From Orbicella franksi (Eukaryota): a DNA stretch of 64,000 bases. A model generated the notes under the pieces. It saw nothing but the letters and a program-made list of their open reading frames with translations. It ran no database searches and was not told the DNA's origin. This document shows positions 4,322-25,678 of the stretch, one piece after another. The first letter of the stretch is position 1. Each line of letters opens with the position of its first letter. The translations under genes and the position numbers were made by a program. The stretch spans positions 29,202,001 through 29,266,000 of the forward strand of contig OZ116705.1 in assembly GCA_964199315.1 (NCBI GenBank), written 5' to 3'.

Positions 4322-7300
4322 CTAACAAGACTTGCTCTGCAAACCTGGAAAGAGAATAAAAACAAAACTGAATAACCAGATACTAGTAGCAGCTATTGAA
4401 TTGTTGTTCAGGTCCACTTGATGGGAGGCATTAAGGACGCTCGCGCTAATTGTTTCTGCGCATCCTTACTGTGCACGAAATTCACATGCCACGTCATGCA
4501 TCAAGCGTGCGCGCTAAGTAGTAAGGTGAACAATAATAAGGCAAATGGCCACTGCTACAACTTTGCGTCGATTTAACGCTCTTGGACATTCGGTGACCCC
4601 TATTTTTCTTTTGATGGGCCATTTTCTCAACCGATTTTCTACCTTTTGCAAAAAAATGAAGAAAATCTATCGTGTAGAAGTTTGAATTTTTTGCAAAATG
4701 CACCATCAAATTCCGTTCATTTGACCTCTCCGTTTAGCTGTGCGTCAGTTTGAAAAGCCTCTTGAAGGGTTAAGGTTTGTGAAAATGATGGCAATATTTA
4801 GAATTATTGATGCCACAGATCCACTTATGCAAAATATTGTTAGGACAGTTTGCCTCTGTTGACTTATCTTTGATATTTCAACCTATGACGCTGGAGACCA
4901 TGCTGAATTACGCACACCAATTTATCAAAATCAGACTAGTTTTCCACACGCTTGATCTCTGAAACGAAGTCGGTGACCCCCAATTTTTATTTCATTTCTG
5001 AAACAAGTATATCATTATCTGTCCGCAGTAGAGGTTTTAAAGAAATCTATCGAGTACAAAATTTTCGCGCGAACGTCCTTAAATTATTCTACGATGATGA
5101 GTGCAGGTTACCTCCTTTGAGCAGTTTGGTGGGAATCATAGAAAATAGTATAATACAGATAGGACCCTGTGTGCACTCCGATTGGTCAAAAAACTATGTT
5201 TTAACGGAGTATTAAACATAGAAAAAGCGTGTTTTATTGTTTTTTTGCCACATTACCTCTATATCATAAACCAAATCAACCTAGAAACCTAAGCCATGTA
5301 TTACACTGTGATAAAACACTCCGAACATTTGAGAACACTAGTGAAATATAGAAATCACTCGCCTGTAGCTCGTGTTTTCTCTTGTGTTCTTAAATGCTTG
5401 TCGTGTTTTACATGTATCACAGTGTAAAACACGGCTAAGCCTTCTTCATTTGTTAAAGAAAAGCCTTATGATTCATACTAAGCAACACAGTGGAGGATTA
5501 AAGGTCAACATCTTCCAAACTTATTCCAATCTACTCACAATTTTGTCATAGTCCCTGCTATAATGTAAACAGTATTCTATCACTATTTTCTCGATCTTAG
5601 TTGCAAGATCTGATCAGCTGAAAAGCCATGTAGGAATCAGAAAACCATGTTTTACTATTTCAAGTGTGTTATATCAAAATCATAAATTAGTGTTTTACTC
5701 AACTTTAGCTTTATTTGTTAAATAATAACTTAATGATAATTCTCTTGAATAAAACAGGTAATTAACATTCCAAGGAGACATACAAATTTGTCTACAATCA
5801 CGACAAGATTATAAATCTCTGAAAAAGAAGAACAGTTAACATACCCAGGAGAAATATAGAAAATGATAGACCTGACAAGCAGACTTAATGTACACAGCAT
5901 GATGTAGTAAGTGTTACCTTGTATGAGTTGAAATGATGTACATTATTAATAAACTGTCTTATAACACAGTGTATTGCCAAAGTCTCACCTTGTTTGGGTA
6001 GCAGGCTGACGTAGTGGACTTCATGAACATGGCCCAGCACAAGTGGGTTGGTGCTGATCACATCACCATCAGGCCTGATAGTAAGGTCACGGTGATTTGA
6101 CTGACTGCTAATCACATCAATGTACGTTTTATAGCAGTTTGTAGTCACATACAGAATCACGTGATCGCCCCATGTGCCATCTTGCTCCATGTTTGTAAGA
6201 TAATCAGCCCATGACTGATATCCATTGATGAAGTTAAACAGATCTGTTCCATCAGGCTGTAAGAAGGGAGAATAAAAAGGCTAACTTTAGGTCAGTACAC
6301 ACATACGGGGGTATACGTGTGATGGCAGAAATGTCCCTCCATAAAGTTACATGTATAACGGAGAACCAAATTTTGAGATCTTTCCTCAAAACAAATTATT
6401 TTAAGACAACTAATCCCTGTACATGGCGATGCCCAGTTTTCTGCCATCTTATCGGACTGCAAGTCCAATTCAAATGCTGACACAAATGCTGGAGTCTGAT
6501 TACTTGGAACATATTTTCCCAAGCCACAAATCATTGTTAAGATATTTTAACCCGAAAAAACAAAATAAAATACTAAACTTACCAGTTTTGGGTTCTTTCT
6601 GAGGTACTGCACTATGGATTGTCTTAATTCTCCATGTGAGATCTCGATTCCTTTCACAACGTTCAGTTGTTCAGACAGCGCATGAAACATGCAGTTCCCC
6701 GACCCTTCATTGTCAGAAATCACAAAGCCTTTGTCTGATGCAATTTTCTTCAACTCTGCTGATGGGTCAGTATTACTGTTGAAGTTGCTTACACTGCGTT
6801 GAATTTGCTGAAGACTCATGAACATTTGCCCAGGCAGATCTAAAAAGAAAAAACGTGTAAATTCAGGTCACTGCACAGGGGTTACTCACTGGAATCTTTT
6901 GGTGGAAAGGGAAAGCGATATCTGTTTCTTCAAATCCTATTTGAGACAAAAATACCTCATTTTTAAAACTCTTAGTTTCTATTAACTGAGTTGCAAAATG
7001 GCAGTGTGTAAACTCGCATACACAGTCCCATGGAAAGAGATTTATAATACAGTCACTGAACTATGCTTTTAGGATTTCTATATGAAAAAACTACAGTCAA
7101 ACCTGTATATAATGGCCCTGTATTAAGTGGCTAGTTTTCGAAGTCCCGATTTTTCACTCAAACAAACGCTGTATTTGTTACCTGAATTAGGCGGCCACCT
7201 CTATTAAGCAGCTGTGGCCACCCTGTGACAGTCCTATGTTTGCCTTTCTTATTTATTTTTACCTGTATTAAGCGACCACCCTTGAATGGAAACTAAACCA

Positions 7301-25300: not shown

Positions 25301-25678
25301 AGGCAATGTAGTCAACTGGTTACCACTCAAGTCCAGATACCGGAGATTCTTGAGATGTTTTATGTTTGAAGGTAGAACAGACAACTGGTTGTTACTCACA
25401 ATAAGCCAGGTCAGGTTACTCAACTCACAAATACTGTGAGGAAGTTCTCTCAAGTGGTTCCAGTGTAATCTCAGCCTTTTCAGATTTTTCAGCTTTTTAA
25501 TACTTGTTGGTAATTCTTTCAGATAATTAACTGACAAGTCAAGTTCCTCCAATTCAGTCTGGTCAGACACAGCTTCAGGAACTTTTGACAACCCTTTACG
25601 ACTCAGACGTAAACAGCTTTCTCCATCCTCGTTTGTATAAATCTCCTTCCTTAGCTCCTCTGCTGACATTTTCTCCAT
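4322..25678 (-). CDS. Roco-family gene copy A: LRR-Roc-COR-GT4 glycosyltransferase-OTU, 11 coding exons, ~1645 aa, apparently intact
   Basis: Manual splicing with GT..AG boundaries and matching phases: 25678-25039, 15145-14637, 14264-13517, 13106-13010, 12823-12574, 11553-10747, 9633-8400, 7889-7785, 6839-6583, 6256-5989, 4344-4322. Total 4938 nt = 1645 aa + stop, with no internal stop. The splice sites of all eight exons seen in both paralogs are conserved in copy B. The ATG at 25678 and the last exon are inferred without RNA data. Confidence 0.88.
4435..5078. mobile_element. 644-bp non-autonomous element with TTAA TSD (Kolobok-like)
   Basis: TIR GGACG(C/T)TCGCGC with TTAA on both sides. 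The paralogous empty site in copy B (~51082) has a single TTAA. A purine-purine start with TTAA fits Kolobok better than piggyBac. Confidence 0.82.
5989..6839 (-). CDS. Copy A OTU-like cysteine protease (deubiquitinase) domain (exons 6839-6583 and 6256-5989)
   Basis: Cys box DNEGSGNCMFHALSEQL, LRQSIVQYL, DGTWGDHVIL and His box LGHVHEVHYVSL. Catalytic Cys and His are both present. Confidence 0.88.
7094..7552. mobile_element. 459-bp Tc1/mariner-pogo-type MITE
   Basis: TIR CAGTC(A/G)AACCTGTATATAA with TA TSD; absent from the paralogous intron of copy B (single TA at ~53289). Confidence 0.88.
8400..9633 (-). CDS. Copy A GT-B fold, family 4 glycosyltransferase domain in a single 1234-nt exon
   Basis: N-terminal EWDSSKGGLSTIN loop, FGRG..KG donor-binding residues, and PSRTEGFGLTALEALSAGLPILVS with an intact E-x7-E motif. 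Confidence 0.92.
10747..13106 (-). CDS. Copy A COR region (exons 13106-13010, 12823-12574, 11553-10747)
   Basis: Follows Roc. Contains EPYMGEKIPVRW, FYHGLGVII..TVVLKAQWLIDLLKQLI, MMEQFGLI..YFVPAQL and VPHGLFSQLV, which are COR-like motifs, plus a Cys-rich C-terminal part. Confidence 0.8.
11905..12285 (+). mobile_element. Tandem tRNA-derived SINE/satellite units (~255-bp period) in a copy A intron
   Basis: Two copies of ggtagagcatt..cggtaacgcaaaggt..gggtt..aatcccgttca..gcctgaaattttttcagg; the second has an A box (TAGCTCAGTTGG). Absent from copy B. Confidence 0.72.
13517..15145 (-). CDS. Copy A Roc GTPase domain (exons 15145-14637 and 14264-13517)
   Basis: G1 LLIGQDRAGKTSL, G2 STEGIEV, G3 DVWDFAGQHLYYASHPLFL and G4 PVLIVGTHAD are typical Roc motifs. 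Confidence 0.92.
15586..15900. repeat. Left subterminal 9/18-bp tandem repeats of the MULE-like element
   Basis: Repeated gggtcacttgggccattt / gggtcagtt units, the reverse complement of the right-end array. Confidence 0.85.
16048..18844 (+). CDS. DUF3987/YfjI-like AAA+ P-loop ATPase (putative helicase) with a C-terminal winged-helix-like region, 3 exons, ~502 aa
   Basis: Exons 16048-16441, 16919-17622 and 18434-18844 splice in frame. Walker A APSGTGKT, Walker B LCVDEA, RLCKCYDG, FTTPQ and an arginine-finger-like GLAERMLF. The family name comes from motif recall, not an HMM search. Confidence 0.75.
19333..19565. mobile_element. Palindromic MITE nested between the 3' ends of the two transposon genes
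   Basis: TIR GG(C/T)CATT(A/T)TACAGTTG flanked by TA; internal long inverted repeat. Confidence 0.7.
19821..23580 (-). CDS. DDE transposase (Mutator-like, DUF6729-like N-terminus) fused to a pseudo-OTU and a CXC domain, 2 exons, ~1012 aa
   Basis: Exons 23580-21351 and 20629-19821 join in frame (GYFS N ELGNV; donor gtaagt, acceptor ttttatag). Putative triad SADHTFK / FVDDCC / STRNENLH with a D-x2-H motif (KLDLFH). Tesmin-type CXC: CSCGRG..C..SRCKC..C...CKCVDCGN. Confidence 0.8.
23690..23940. repeat. Right subterminal 9/18-bp tandem repeats of the MULE-like element
   Basis: Repeated aaatgacccaactggccc units, inverted relative to 15586-15900. Confidence 0.85.
25039..25678 (-). CDS. Copy A exon 1: leucine-rich repeat domain (~8 x 23-aa LRRs)
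   Basis: Repeats such as LEELDLSVNYLKELPTSIKKLKN and LRYLDLSGNQLTTLPDEIGELKK; C-cap LSVAGNPL. The phase-1 donor ACAG|gtaaag joins in frame to the Roc exon at 15145. Confidence 0.92.

What the first reader, a model, noticed from the sequence alone, without database searches (positions are those of the whole stretch)
4322..25678. Kinase-less Roco receptor with two catalytic effector domains: LRR-Roc-COR-GT4-OTU
Seen: an intact spliced ORF joins an LRR sensor and a Roc-COR GTPase switch to a family-4 glycosyltransferase (E-x7-E intact) and an OTU protease (Cys/His intact). The paralog also keeps both catalytic sites. Known: Roco proteins normally end in a kinase (LRRK) or death domain (DAPK1), and group-1 glycosyltransferase domains have been reported on coral NLRs (Acropora digitifera NLR survey). 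I do not know a description of Roc-COR+GT4+OTU. Inference: a ligand- and GTP-gated cytosolic immune receptor that glycosylates and deubiquitinates targets.
Basis: partly seen in the sequence, partly recalled or inferred. Interest (0 to 1): 0.9.

Follow-up and report, generated by a model that had tools for sequence, protein, structure and literature searches.

The report
Coral Roco GTPase with glycosyltransferase and OTU
A stony-coral gene joins a leucine-rich-repeat sensor and a Roc-COR GTPase switch to two enzyme domains, a family-4 glycosyltransferase and an OTU-type cysteine protease; the gene is real and conserved, but close variants of this layout were already catalogued in 2021.

Summary
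On the minus strand, 25678 to 4322, an 11-exon model with all-canonical GT..AG introns gives an intact 1645-aa ORF: LRR, Roc, COR, GT4 (PF20706 "GT4-conflict"), short linker, OTU. RNA reads and contigs show the junctions COR-A>COR-B>GT4>linker>OTU-1>OTU-2>last exon. GT4 and OTU therefore lie on the Roc-COR transcript.

The LRR>Roc junction (9.9-kb transposon-filled intron) was not seen in reads. It rests on matching splice phase and on a related locus with the same junction across a 0.84-kb intron.

The window's tandem paralog (E4-E11) and five loci from four other assemblies share the exon order, and two Stylophora pistillata loci share parts of it. Catalytic motifs are invariant, and dN/dS is mostly 0.2-0.5, reaching 0.8 on short exons.

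The novelty claim is overstated. Kaur et al. 2021 (eLife) described bacterial LRR-Roc-COR-GT4 proteins and the Acropora GT4 expansion. Their tables list amphioxus "LRR+sGTP+OTU+GT4" and Acropora "sGTP+GT4".

The OTU keeps Cys and His but has Ser at a conserved Asp position and Val two residues after the His. Activity and an immune role remain inferred.

Verdict: a new, RNA-supported variant of a known kind.

The parts
25039..25678 (-). Exon 1: start codon and LRR domain (protein residues 1-213)
   Evidence: Pfam LRR_8 5.5e-27 and LRR_14 2.9e-27. Donor ACAG|GTAAAG, phase 1. The junction to exon 2 was not seen in reads. Its words are held at only 0.2-0.3 in RNA runs.
15146..25038 (-). Intron 1, 9893 bp, holding transposon-type ORFs
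   Evidence: GTAAAG..TATTAG. Contains a 759-aa ORF at 21310-23586 (-) and a DUF3987 ORF at 16861-17646 (+), Pfam 6.9e-15. The equivalent intron in related locus L007 is 0.84 kb.
14637..15145 (-). Exon 2: Roc G1 (GQDRAGKTS) and G2 (STEGIEV), then an acidic insert
   Evidence: Pfam Roc, profile 1-46, 28.1 bits. P-loop scan. More than 1300 related ORFs in public assemblies; the eight read in full all end ...(K/Q)V, as expected if the donor AAG|GTTTGA is conserved.
13517..14264 (-). Exon 3: Roc G3 (DFAGQ), G4 (THAD), G5 (FSIDN)
   Evidence: Pfam Roc, profile 49-88, 31.6 bits. Motifs invariant in paralogs.
13010..13106 (-). Exon 4: Roc-COR linker
   Evidence: Canonical splice sites, phases 1 and 2. 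Conserved in g2 and L002-L007, dN/dS 0.09-0.68.
12574..12823 (-). Exon 5: COR-A, first part
   Evidence: Pfam COR-A, profile 5-85, 23.4 bits. Its 3' end is joined to exon 6 in 34 RNA reads: loose end at 11554 matches 12575-12604.
10747..11553 (-). Exon 6: end of COR-A plus presumed COR-B
   Evidence: Pfam COR-A, profile 88-141, 13.4 bits. Atlas feature hits to COR-B/COR-A clusters at 0.97. The AF2 model was too poor to test the fold.
8400..9633 (-). Exon 7: whole GT4 glycosyltransferase domain
   Evidence: PF20706 GT4-conflict 2e-86. AF2 pLDDT 91. Foldseek MshA 3c4q TM 0.72-0.76, also BshA and GlgA. RNA joints 9632>10746 (10 reads plus a contig) and 7889>8400.
7785..7889 (-). Exon 8: 35-residue linker
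   Evidence: RNA joints 7889>8400 and 6839>7785. Present in g2, L001, L003 and L004; not found in L002 or L005.
6583..6839 (-). Exon 9: OTU N-terminal half with catalytic Cys (GSGNCMF)
   Evidence: Pfam OTU, profile 2-40, 25.5 bits. Aligns to OTUD5 and OTUD3 around the Cys. RNA joint 6256>6583, 19 reads.
5989..6256 (-). Exon 10: OTU C-terminal half with His motif (LGHVHEVHYVSL)
   Evidence: Pfam OTU, profile 55-96, 22.5 bits. Motif invariant in seven copies. 55 reads continue from 5987 into exon 11.
4322..4344 (-). Exon 11: last 7 codons and TAG stop
   Evidence: The loose-end consensus of 55 reads matches 4313-4342. Acceptor TTCCAG|.
50974..64000 (-). Tandem paralog (gene 2), exons 4-11 plus the end of exon 3; runs off the window
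   Evidence: Exons are 84-93% identical in DNA to gene 1. Canonical splice sites and an open frame of 1009 aa. Catalytic motifs kept.
1788..3378 (+). Inverted, degenerate LRR-exon-like array next to the 3' end of gene 1
   Evidence: tblastn with exon 1 gives pieces in three frames, several with internal stops.
48331..49646 (+). Inverted, degenerate LRR-exon-like array next to the 3' end of gene 2
   Evidence: tblastn and blastn. The same arrangement occurs in related locus L003.

Best explanation
This is a transcribed, intact member of a conserved stony-coral gene family. It encodes a soluble, probably cytosolic, 1645-aa protein.

Domain order:
- N-terminal LRR.
- Roc GTPase with a roughly 170-residue acidic insert between switch I and G3.
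- COR.
- A complete GT-B family-4 glycosyltransferase of the "GT4-conflict" type.
- A 35-residue linker.
- A C-terminal OTU-like cysteine protease.

Shown: the exon structure, the spliced linkage COR>GT4>OTU, conservation of the layout across paralogs and across coral lineages, purifying selection, and intact core motifs.

Inferred mechanism: the protein works like the bacterial LRR-Roc-COR-effector conflict proteins and like NLR/STAND receptors.
1. The variable LRR binds a foreign or danger ligand.
2. This relieves autoinhibition of the Roc-COR module, which changes nucleotide state and dimerises or oligomerises through COR.
3. The two C-terminal enzymes are then brought into action.
4. GT4 transfers a sugar from a nucleotide-sugar donor, with retention of configuration, onto a protein or other macromolecule of the invader or host.
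5. OTU cleaves ubiquitin or a ubiquitin-like modifier, or another acyl/peptide bond, from the same or a coupled target.

Origin: the GT4 domain came from inside the cnidarian GT4 expansion, so the layout was assembled in corals by domain shuffling. It was probably not inherited whole from a bacterial LRR-Roc-COR-GT4 gene.
For: Gene model: 11 exons, all introns GT..AG, one ORF.

RNA:
- PolyA reads (run X23) and RNA contigs (X1, X5) show joints for introns 6-9.
- Loose ends define introns 5 and 10.

Domains.

GT-B fold: AF2 pLDDT 91, nearest solved structures MshA, BshA and GlgA.

Family conservation:
- Loci L001-L005 from four other assemblies are all colinear Roc>COR-A>COR-B>GT4>OTU1>OTU2, as far as each locus reaches.
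- Two Stylophora pistillata loci carry parts of the same order. L009 has Roc, COR-A, COR-B, GT4 and OTU-1; L008 has GT4, OTU-1 and OTU-2. Their annotated proteins are fragment models PFX14164.1 and PFX14815.1.

LRR link: locus L007 has an LRR exon 0.84 kb upstream of the Roc exon. It uses the same phase-1 junction...PG|HV..., as the window's ...TG|HV....

Selection: dN/dS is 0.2-0.5 in most comparisons for the Roc, COR, GT4 and OTU exons (up to 0.62 for Roc, 0.83 for OTU). One stop was found, in the L004 OTU-2 exon.

Motifs invariant in seven copies: GSGNC, HE(V/L)HYVSL, PSRTEGFGLTALEALSAG, WDFAGQ, GTHADK.

Origin:
- The nine family GT4 domains form one clade (SH-aLRT 100).
- That clade is nested among GT4s of other layouts, one of which is named (Montipora capricornis).
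- It lies apart from the C-terminal GT4s of STAND/TPR proteins.

Analogy: PMC8195603 describes LRR+AP-GTPase+COR with variable C-terminal effectors, GT4 among them, and proposes GT4 as an effector in metazoan immunity.

Localisation: no hydrophobic segment typical of a membrane helix.
Against: - No read shows exon 1 joined to exon 2. Intron 1 is 9.9 kb with transposon ORFs.
- Exon-1 words are held at only 0.2-0.3 in RNA runs.
- Most laid reads are 95-99% alike rather than 99% or more. Some OTU-1 reads continue into an upstream exon that is in neither the window nor the fetched loci. The RNA evidence therefore speaks for the family or allele and cannot be pinned to this exact copy.
- Introns 2-4 rest on sequence and conservation only.
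- COR-B has no Pfam hit, and its AF2 model was unusable at pLDDT 45.
- The OTU has Ser where OTUD5 and OTUD3 have the conserved Asp before the Cys, and Val at His+2.
- The C-terminal OTU half finds no solved OTU by sequence.
- There is no PADLOC hit and no NCBIfam equivalog.
- Donor, acceptor, substrate, ligand and any infection-linked expression are unknown.
Confidence: 0.6

Rival explanations
1. In this copy the LRR exon is no longer used. The transposon-filled 9.9-kb intron has uncoupled it, and the mRNA starts nearer exon 2. The product would be a sensor-less Roc-COR-GT4-OTU protein, or the exon-1-like sequence belongs to a separate remnant.
For: No read evidence exists for intron 1. The only read-laying run covered 5801-11600. 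Exon-1 words are held at only 0.2-0.3 in RNA runs, against about 0.5 for the 5.8-kb body stretch. Degenerate orphan LRR arrays lie nearby, so LRR exons do get stranded in this region.
Against: The exon-1 ORF is intact from its ATG. Its strong donor, AG|GTAAAG, is in phase 1 and fits the exon-2 acceptor exactly. Related locus L007 has the same junction position and phase. Exon 2 has no in-frame ATG upstream of the P-loop region within its open segment.
Confidence: 0.2
2. The OTU module is not a deubiquitinase. It may be a pseudo-enzyme that only binds ubiquitin or a ubiquitin-like protein. Alternatively it may be a protease or acyl-transferase with another role, for example cutting the receptor itself to release GT4.
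For: Ser replaces the conserved Asp at Cys-3 in the alignment to OTUD5 and OTUD3. Val follows His-Tyr where, from my recollection of OTU structures (not checked here), OTUs have Asp or Asn. Pfam scores for the two halves are near threshold. The C-terminal half finds no solved OTU by sequence.
Against: Cys and His and their surroundings are invariant in seven copies, including the Stylophora relative. dN/dS on the OTU exons is mostly 0.2-0.5. A Cys-His pair can suffice for catalysis in papain-like folds (general knowledge).
Confidence: 0.3
3. The protein is not an immune or conflict receptor. It would be a housekeeping signalling enzyme, with a Roco GTPase regulating protein glycosylation and ubiquitin turnover in normal cell physiology.
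For: No expression or challenge data were examined. The human kinase-less Roco MFHAS1 and the LRRKs act in trafficking and signalling (general knowledge). The transcript appears in ordinary coral RNA libraries.
Against: The family is large and forms tandem duplicates: more than 1300 related Roc-exon ORFs and thousands of GT4 ORFs in public assemblies. It sits among transposons and degenerate LRR copies. Its GT4 belongs to the Pfam family defined from conflict systems. These are hallmarks of lineage-specific immune-type expansions (PMC8195603; PMC12314368).
Confidence: 0.1
4. The fusion is an artefact: GT4 and OTU are separate genes lying downstream of a Roc-COR gene.
For: Public gene calls on related contigs list each exon as its own ORF. 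The Stylophora models are fragments.
Against: Spliced reads and RNA contigs join COR-B to GT4, GT4 to the linker, the linker to OTU-1, and OTU-1 to OTU-2. All phases fit one ORF. The separate ORFs come from intron-blind gene calling.
Confidence: 0.03

Closest known systems
Bacterial LRR + AP-GTPase (Roc) + COR + GT4 conflict proteins (Kaur, Iyer, Burroughs, Aravind, eLife 2021, PMC8195603; e.g. WP_107867044.1, 1510 aa)
   Same: Same order LRR, Roc, COR, then a C-terminal GT4 of the same Pfam family (PF20706). Same proposed logic of sensor, GTPase switch and effector.
   Different: The bacterial proteins are single-effector, with no OTU. The coral GT4 groups with GT4s of other layouts (coral where named) and not with the C-terminal GT4s of prokaryote-type STAND/TPR proteins in my sample. 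The layout therefore looks re-assembled rather than inherited. Bacterial Roco-GT4 sequences themselves were not in my tree.
[quoted passage not shown]
   Same: The same four parts, LRR, small GTPase, OTU and GT4, in one polypeptide of similar length.
   Different: OTU comes before GT4. No COR is annotated. They appear only as table rows from an old automatic gene set, and OTU is not discussed in the paper's text (0 mentions). I could not fetch the sequences to compare them.
Acropora GT4 expansion: GT4-NACHT-LRR and other 'glycos_transf_1' proteins (PMC8195603; PMC12314368; Acropora digitifera 'sGTP+GT4+TM' XP_015759029/30)
   Same: Homologous GT4 domain, 50-59% identical. Lineage-specific expansion in tandem arrays.
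   Different: In most of those proteins GT4 is N-terminal and the switch is a STAND ATPase. Here GT4 is internal, the switch is Roc-COR, and an OTU follows. Only 4 of the 150 best GT4 representatives carry any piece of Roc, linker or OTU.
Animal Roco proteins: LRRK1, LRRK2, DAPK1, MFHAS1
   Same: Roc with a TH-x-D type G4 motif followed by COR, and LRR on the N-terminal side. MFHAS1 is also kinase-less (general knowledge).
   Different: No kinase or death domain. There are two unrelated enzyme domains instead, and a long acidic insert inside Roc.
OTUD-type deubiquitinases (OTUD5 3pfy/3tmo, OTUD3 4bou)
   Same: The Cys-loop region aligns, G-x-G-N-C-x-F-x-A-L. A His-Tyr motif lies near the C-terminus.
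   Different: Asp at Cys-3 is Ser. There is no Asp or Asn at His+2. E-values are weak (0.03) because the domain is split across exons.

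Membership tests
Roco (Roc-COR) proteins | Ras-like Roc GTPase with G1-G5 motifs | tested here: met
   Pfam Roc on exon 2 (28.1 bits) and exon 3 (31.6 bits), both above the 27-bit cut-off, at consecutive profile positions. Motifs GQDRAGKTS, STEGIEV, DFAGQ, THAD and FSIDN are present. A roughly 170-residue insert lies between G2 and G3.
Roco (Roc-COR) proteins | COR domain directly after Roc: COR-A | tested here: met
   Pfam COR-A, profile 5-85 on exon 5 (23.4 bits) and 88-141 on exon 6 (13.4 bits). 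Each is below the 35.3-bit cut-off, but the two are contiguous and sum to about 36.8.
Roco (Roc-COR) proteins | COR domain: COR-B dimerisation part | tested here: inconclusive
   No Pfam COR-B hit. Atlas feature similarity of 0.97 to COR-B/COR-A clusters. AF2 model pLDDT 45, not usable.
GT4 / Pfam PF20706 GT4-conflict | Full-length match to the family profile | tested here: met
   290.8 bits against a cut-off of 26, profile 2-385 of 385.
GT4 / Pfam PF20706 GT4-conflict | GT-B fold with two Rossmann-like halves | tested here: met
   AF2 pLDDT 91.1, pTM 0.87. Foldseek MshA 3c4q TM 0.72-0.76; BshA and glycogen synthase also match.
GT4 / Pfam PF20706 GT4-conflict | E-x7-E motif in the C-terminal half | tested here: met
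   EGFGLTALE is invariant in seven family copies. It aligns to the same motif of P. abyssi GlgA. Among 43 wider relatives the two Glu are kept in 36 and 28.
GT4 / Pfam PF20706 GT4-conflict | Sugar transfer from a nucleotide sugar | not testable with these tools
   Needs an enzyme assay.
OTU cysteine proteases (PF02338) | Match to the family profile | tested here: met
   Exon 9 scores 25.5 bits (cut-off 23.3), profile 2-40. Exon 10 scores 22.5 bits, profile 55-96. The L001 orthologous ORF scores 27.4 bits.
OTU cysteine proteases (PF02338) | Catalytic Cys and His | tested here: met
   The Cys in GSGNC aligns with the Cys-loop of OTUD5 and OTUD3. The His-Tyr motif is invariant. Assignment of the His rests on motif resemblance, since no solved OTU aligned to that half.
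OTU cysteine proteases (PF02338) | Conserved Asp three residues before the Cys; acidic or amide residue two after the His | tested here: not met
   Ser aligns with the Asp of OTUD5 and OTUD3. His-Tyr is followed by Val. The role of these residues is taken from my own recollection of OTU structures, not from a tool result.
NLR / STAND receptors | NACHT or NB-ARC ATPase | tested here: not met
   No such Pfam hit on any exon. The protein works like an NLR but is not one.
Bacterial AP-GTPase conflict systems (PMC8195603) | LRR + AP-GTPase + COR with a variable C-terminal effector | tested here: met
   The architecture is matched (description). Common descent of the whole layout was not tested. The GT4 part groups with coral-type GT4s of other layouts.

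The most novel reading that the evidence does not exclude
GT4 and OTU may form a coupled, ubiquitin-directed two-enzyme effector. The GT4 would glycosylate ubiquitin, a ubiquitin-like protein or ubiquitinated targets, and the OTU would edit or remove them, all under control of a Roco GTPase switch.

The hint is that GT4 domains of this metazoan family recur next to ubiquitin-system parts in independent layouts:
- OTU after GT4 in corals.
- OTU before GT4 in amphioxus, including DED+DED+OTU+GT4+DEATH.
- GT4 fused to four ubiquitin repeats in Acropora digitifera.
- GT4 fused to a SidE-like domain in Acropora digitifera.

This would be a new kind of immune chemistry in animals.
Probability: 0.1. 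Interest if true: 0.85.

Novelty: new variant of a known kind. Interest (0 to 1): 0.45.

Why it matters
- It provides an RNA-supported, cleanly modelled animal example of a Roco GTPase driving non-kinase enzymatic effectors. That layout was previously described in bacteria and only tabulated for amphioxus.
- It shows that corals built this layout themselves from their expanded GT4 repertoire, which parallels bacterial conflict systems.
- The repeated pairing of GT4 with OTU and other ubiquitin-system parts gives a concrete hypothesis for what the very large, functionally unknown coral GT4 expansion does.
- Roc-COR regulation of a fused enzyme other than a kinase could also inform LRRK2-type mechanisms.

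Tried and rejected
- Full-length database protein: the length filter of the search for homologous proteins, plus intron-blind ORF calls, meant that searches with the GT4 exon and the Roc exon returned only single-exon ORFs. The eight I read in full had intron-derived N-termini and none was a spliced product.
- Representative search with GT4: no full-length Roc-COR-GT4-OTU representative. Only fragment models appeared.
The word share of exon 1 in RNA runs (0.2-0.3) is inconclusive.
- Run X21 laid no reads, so it is no test.
- AF2 of the COR exon with 7 close sequences gave pLDDT 45 and was not used for fold search.
- PDB sequence search with the OTU C-terminal half, alone and as a profile, found no OTU hit.
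- The joined OTU domain could not be submitted, because spliced sequences have no reference.
- PADLOC gave no hits. NCBIfam gave only far-below-threshold GT4 hits.
- The atlas search with GT4 gave no architecture information.
- Rejected: the high RNA depth at 9681-9874 is not an extra exon. Its loose ends match a dispersed repeat that is also found in L001, L003, L004 and L006.
- Rejected: the earlier strong donor in exon 3 (CAG|GTAAGG). It would remove the G5 motif, which is conserved in paralogs.

Full report
**The gene and its model**

The gene lies on the minus strand. Six-frame ORF listing and Pfam placed the following pieces:
- an LRR exon at about 25.0-25.7 kb;
- Roc pieces at 15.1 and 14.2 kb;
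- COR-A at 12.8 kb;
- a 424-aa ORF that is a complete "GT4-conflict" glycosyltransferase (PF20706, 2e-86) at 9.6-8.4 kb;
- OTU pieces at 6.8 and 6.2 kb.

From splice-site inspection and read evidence I built an 11-exon model:

| Exon | Coordinates (minus strand) | Content |
|---|---|---|
| E1 | 25678-25039 | start codon, LRR |
| E2 | 15145-14637 | Roc G1, G2, acidic insert |
| E3 | 14264-13517 | Roc G3-G5 |
| E4 | 13106-13010 | Roc-COR linker |
| E5 | 12823-12574 | COR-A, first part |
| E6 | 11553-10747 | end of COR-A, presumed COR-B |
| E7 | 9633-8400 | GT4 |
| E8 | 7889-7785 | linker |
| E9 | 6839-6583 | OTU, Cys half |
| E10 | 6256-5989 | OTU, His half |
| E11 | 4344-4322 | last 7 codons, stop |

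All ten introns are GT..AG, the phases fit, and the ORF is 1645 aa with a single terminal stop.

**RNA evidence**

Public coral RNA runs hold about half the words of 5801-11600, roughly the exon share of that stretch. I laid two RNA contig sets and two polyA read sets on that stretch.

Spliced joints:
- 9632>10746, COR-B to GT4: 10 reads from 9 start points, plus a contig.
- 7889>8400, GT4 to linker.
- 6839>7785, linker to OTU-1.
- 6256>6583, OTU-1 to OTU-2: 19 reads, plus contigs.

All have CT..AC ends on the plus strand, which is GT..AG on the gene's strand.

Loose ends:
- 34 reads run from 11554 into sequence identical to 12575-12604, joining E5 to E6.
- 55 reads run from 5987 into 4313-4342, joining E10 to E11.

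Caveats:
- Most reads are 95-99% alike, so they come from another individual's allele or a very close paralog.
- One run laid nothing.
- Some OTU-1 reads continue into an upstream exon found neither in the window nor in the fetched loci. Near-identical OTU exons therefore also sit in at least one other transcript context.
- Introns 1-4 were not covered by reads.

**The LRR link**

Intron 1 is 9.9 kb and carries transposon-type ORFs: a DUF3987 ORF on the plus strand and a 759-aa ORF. Three observations support the junction.
- The exon-1 donor, ACAG|GTAAAG, and the exon-2 acceptor, TATTAG|GT, are both phase 1 and rebuild a Gly codon (...DVTG|HVFKQ...).
- In related locus L007 an LRR exon starting MELYSLEELRK lies 0.84 kb upstream of the Roc exon. 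Its donor is CCAG|GTGAGT and it has the same junction...VPG|HVHGQ....
- The exon-2 donor is supported by eight related ORFs read in full, out of more than 1300 found. All stay open through the acidic insert and end ...(K/Q)V at the conserved AAG|GTTTGA.

Exon-1 words are held at only 0.2-0.3 in RNA runs, which is weak. I put about 0.2 on this copy not using its LRR exon.

**Domains and motifs**

- **Roc.** Pfam covers profile positions 1-46 on E2 and 49-88 on E3. The motifs GQDRAGKTS, STEGIEV, DFAGQ, THAD and FSIDN are present. About 170 mostly acidic residues lie between G2 and G3.
- **COR.** COR-A spans E5 and E6 at consecutive profile positions. COR-B has no Pfam hit. A language-model search puts E6 beside COR-B/COR-A clusters at 0.97. 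My AF2 model of E6 was too poor to use, at pLDDT 45.
- **GT4.** AF2 gives a confident GT-B model, pLDDT 91. The nearest solved structures are the retaining enzymes MshA (TM 0.72-0.76), BshA and glycogen synthases, at 15-20% identity. Sequence search agrees and aligns the E-x7-E motif. NCBIfam finds no equivalog. Donor and acceptor are unknown.
- **OTU.** The Cys loop aligns with OTUD5 and OTUD3. In that alignment the Asp three residues before the Cys is Ser here. The His-Tyr motif is followed by Val, where (from my recollection, not checked here) OTUs have Asp or Asn. "Cys/His intact" is correct, but the site is not fully canonical.
- **Other.** There is no kinase, Death or NACHT domain and no membrane helix.

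**Family**

- The window holds a tandem paralog at 50974 to beyond 64000. It has the same exons E4-E11, canonical splice sites, an open frame and the same motifs.
- GT4-exon ORFs 70-93% identical are abundant in public assemblies.
- Five loci fetched from four assemblies are all colinear Roc>linker>COR-A>COR-B>GT4>(linker)>OTU-1>OTU-2, as far as each locus reaches.
- Pairwise dN/dS against gene 1 is mostly 0.2-0.5 for the Roc, COR, GT4 and OTU exons, up to 0.62 for Roc and 0.83 for OTU. The only stop is one in the L004 OTU-2 exon. These comparisons all share gene 1, so they are not independent.
- All catalytic motifs are invariant in the seven copies.
- Two Stylophora pistillata proteins are fragment models of the same family: PFX14815.1 ("OTU domain-containing protein") and PFX14164.1. 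Their loci are colinear in part. L009 has Roc, COR-A, COR-B, GT4 and OTU-1, with an inverted E4 hit. L008 has GT4, OTU-1 and OTU-2. Both show frame breaks.
- In a tree of GT4 domains the nine family members form one clade (SH-aLRT 100). The clade is nested among GT4s that sit in other layouts, one of them named (Montipora capricornis). It lies apart from a clade of C-terminal GT4s on STAND/TPR proteins.
- Only 4 of the 150 best GT4 representatives carry any Roc, linker or OTU piece.

I infer one origin of this layout by domain shuffling within corals. If the window's coral belongs to a different major coral lineage from Stylophora, which I did not establish, that origin would predate the split of the two lineages.

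**Comparison with the literature**

- Kaur, Iyer, Burroughs and Aravind (eLife 2021, PMC8195603) describe GT4 as an effector domain with more than 500 paralogs in Acropora digitifera.
- The same paper describes bacterial LRR + AP-GTPase + COR proteins with about 24 alternative C-terminal effectors, GT4 among them.
- Their source data list the following:
[quoted passage not shown] - A. digitifera sGTP+GT4+TM, GT4+UBI x4 and GT4+SidE.
- OTU is not mentioned in that paper's main text.
- A 2025 paper on phased Acropora genomes describes glycosyl-transferase-group-1 genes with TPR, LRR-NACHT or ankyrin repeats, with no mention of Roc or OTU (PMC12314368).
- Further text searches found no description of a coral Roc-COR-GT4-OTU protein.

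The parts list and the logic are therefore known. The exact order, the coral family, its transcript support and its conservation are new.

**Mechanism**

By analogy with bacterial Roco conflict proteins and STAND receptors, I read the LRR as the sensor and Roc-COR as a nucleotide-dependent dimerising switch. GT4 and OTU would be effectors released or activated on sensing. All of this is inference.

GT4 recurs beside OTU, ubiquitin repeats and a SidE-like domain in independent layouts. This suggests that the GT4 acts on the ubiquitin system, which I give as the most novel reading at about 0.1.

**Score**

Interest is 0.45. The finding is a solid, well-supported variant of a known kind with a testable functional hypothesis, and a specialist who knows the 2021 paper would not be surprised by it.

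Noticed in passing
window 1788-3378 (+) and 48331-49646 (+); L003 19384-21047 (-): Each Roco gene has, just beyond its 3' end and on the opposite strand, a 1.3-1.6 kb array of LRR-exon-like pieces. The pieces lie in changing frames, several with internal stops, so they look degenerate. The same arrangement occurs in a related locus from another assembly. Whether they are dead exons or conversion donors was not tested.
   Followed up: partly
window 15146-25038: Intron 1 holds transposon-type ORFs: a 759-aa minus-strand ORF with no Pfam hit, a 267-aa ORF with a weak CXC-type hit, and plus-strand ORFs with DUF3987 (6.9e-15). The equivalent intron in a paralog is only 0.84 kb, so this looks like an insertion.
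   Followed up: partly
window 9681-9874: RNA contig depth is very high inside intron 6, up to 23343 against about 1000-3000 on exons. Reads diverge on both sides of about 9731-9762. The loose-end consensus (translation LAQEHNTMS) recurs in L001, L003, L004 and L006. This is a dispersed repeat expressed elsewhere and not an exon of this gene.
   Followed up: partly
window 6837-6850: Some RNA reads and one contig that fit the OTU-1 exon continue upstream into sequence found neither in the window nor in nine related loci. A near-identical OTU exon is therefore spliced to a different upstream exon somewhere else in the genome.
   Followed up: partly
window 37252-39171 (+): Intact 639-aa ORF with a hAT-family C-terminal dimerisation domain (Pfam 8.5e-08). 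Probably a hAT transposase between the two Roco genes.
   Followed up: partly
window 35272-35613 (+): A 113-aa ORF that by eye resembles a Death-type six-helix domain (…LASKFKKIPLEV…LKEIGRNDILQLL…). Pfam gave no hit at 0.001.
   Followed up: partly
P0011 (Montipora capricornis XP_068753269.1): An annotated 543-aa protein has GT4 followed by the start of a Roc domain 52% identical to this gene's Roc. That is the opposite order, so Roc and GT4 are combined in both orders in acroporid corals, unless the model merges two neighbouring genes.
   Followed up: no
P0069 (Stylophora pistillata PFX14815.1), residues about 340-640: In this fragment model the OTU half is followed by about 300 further residues with no Pfam hit. 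The Stylophora relative may carry an extra C-terminal module, or the model may run into a neighbouring gene.
   Followed up: no
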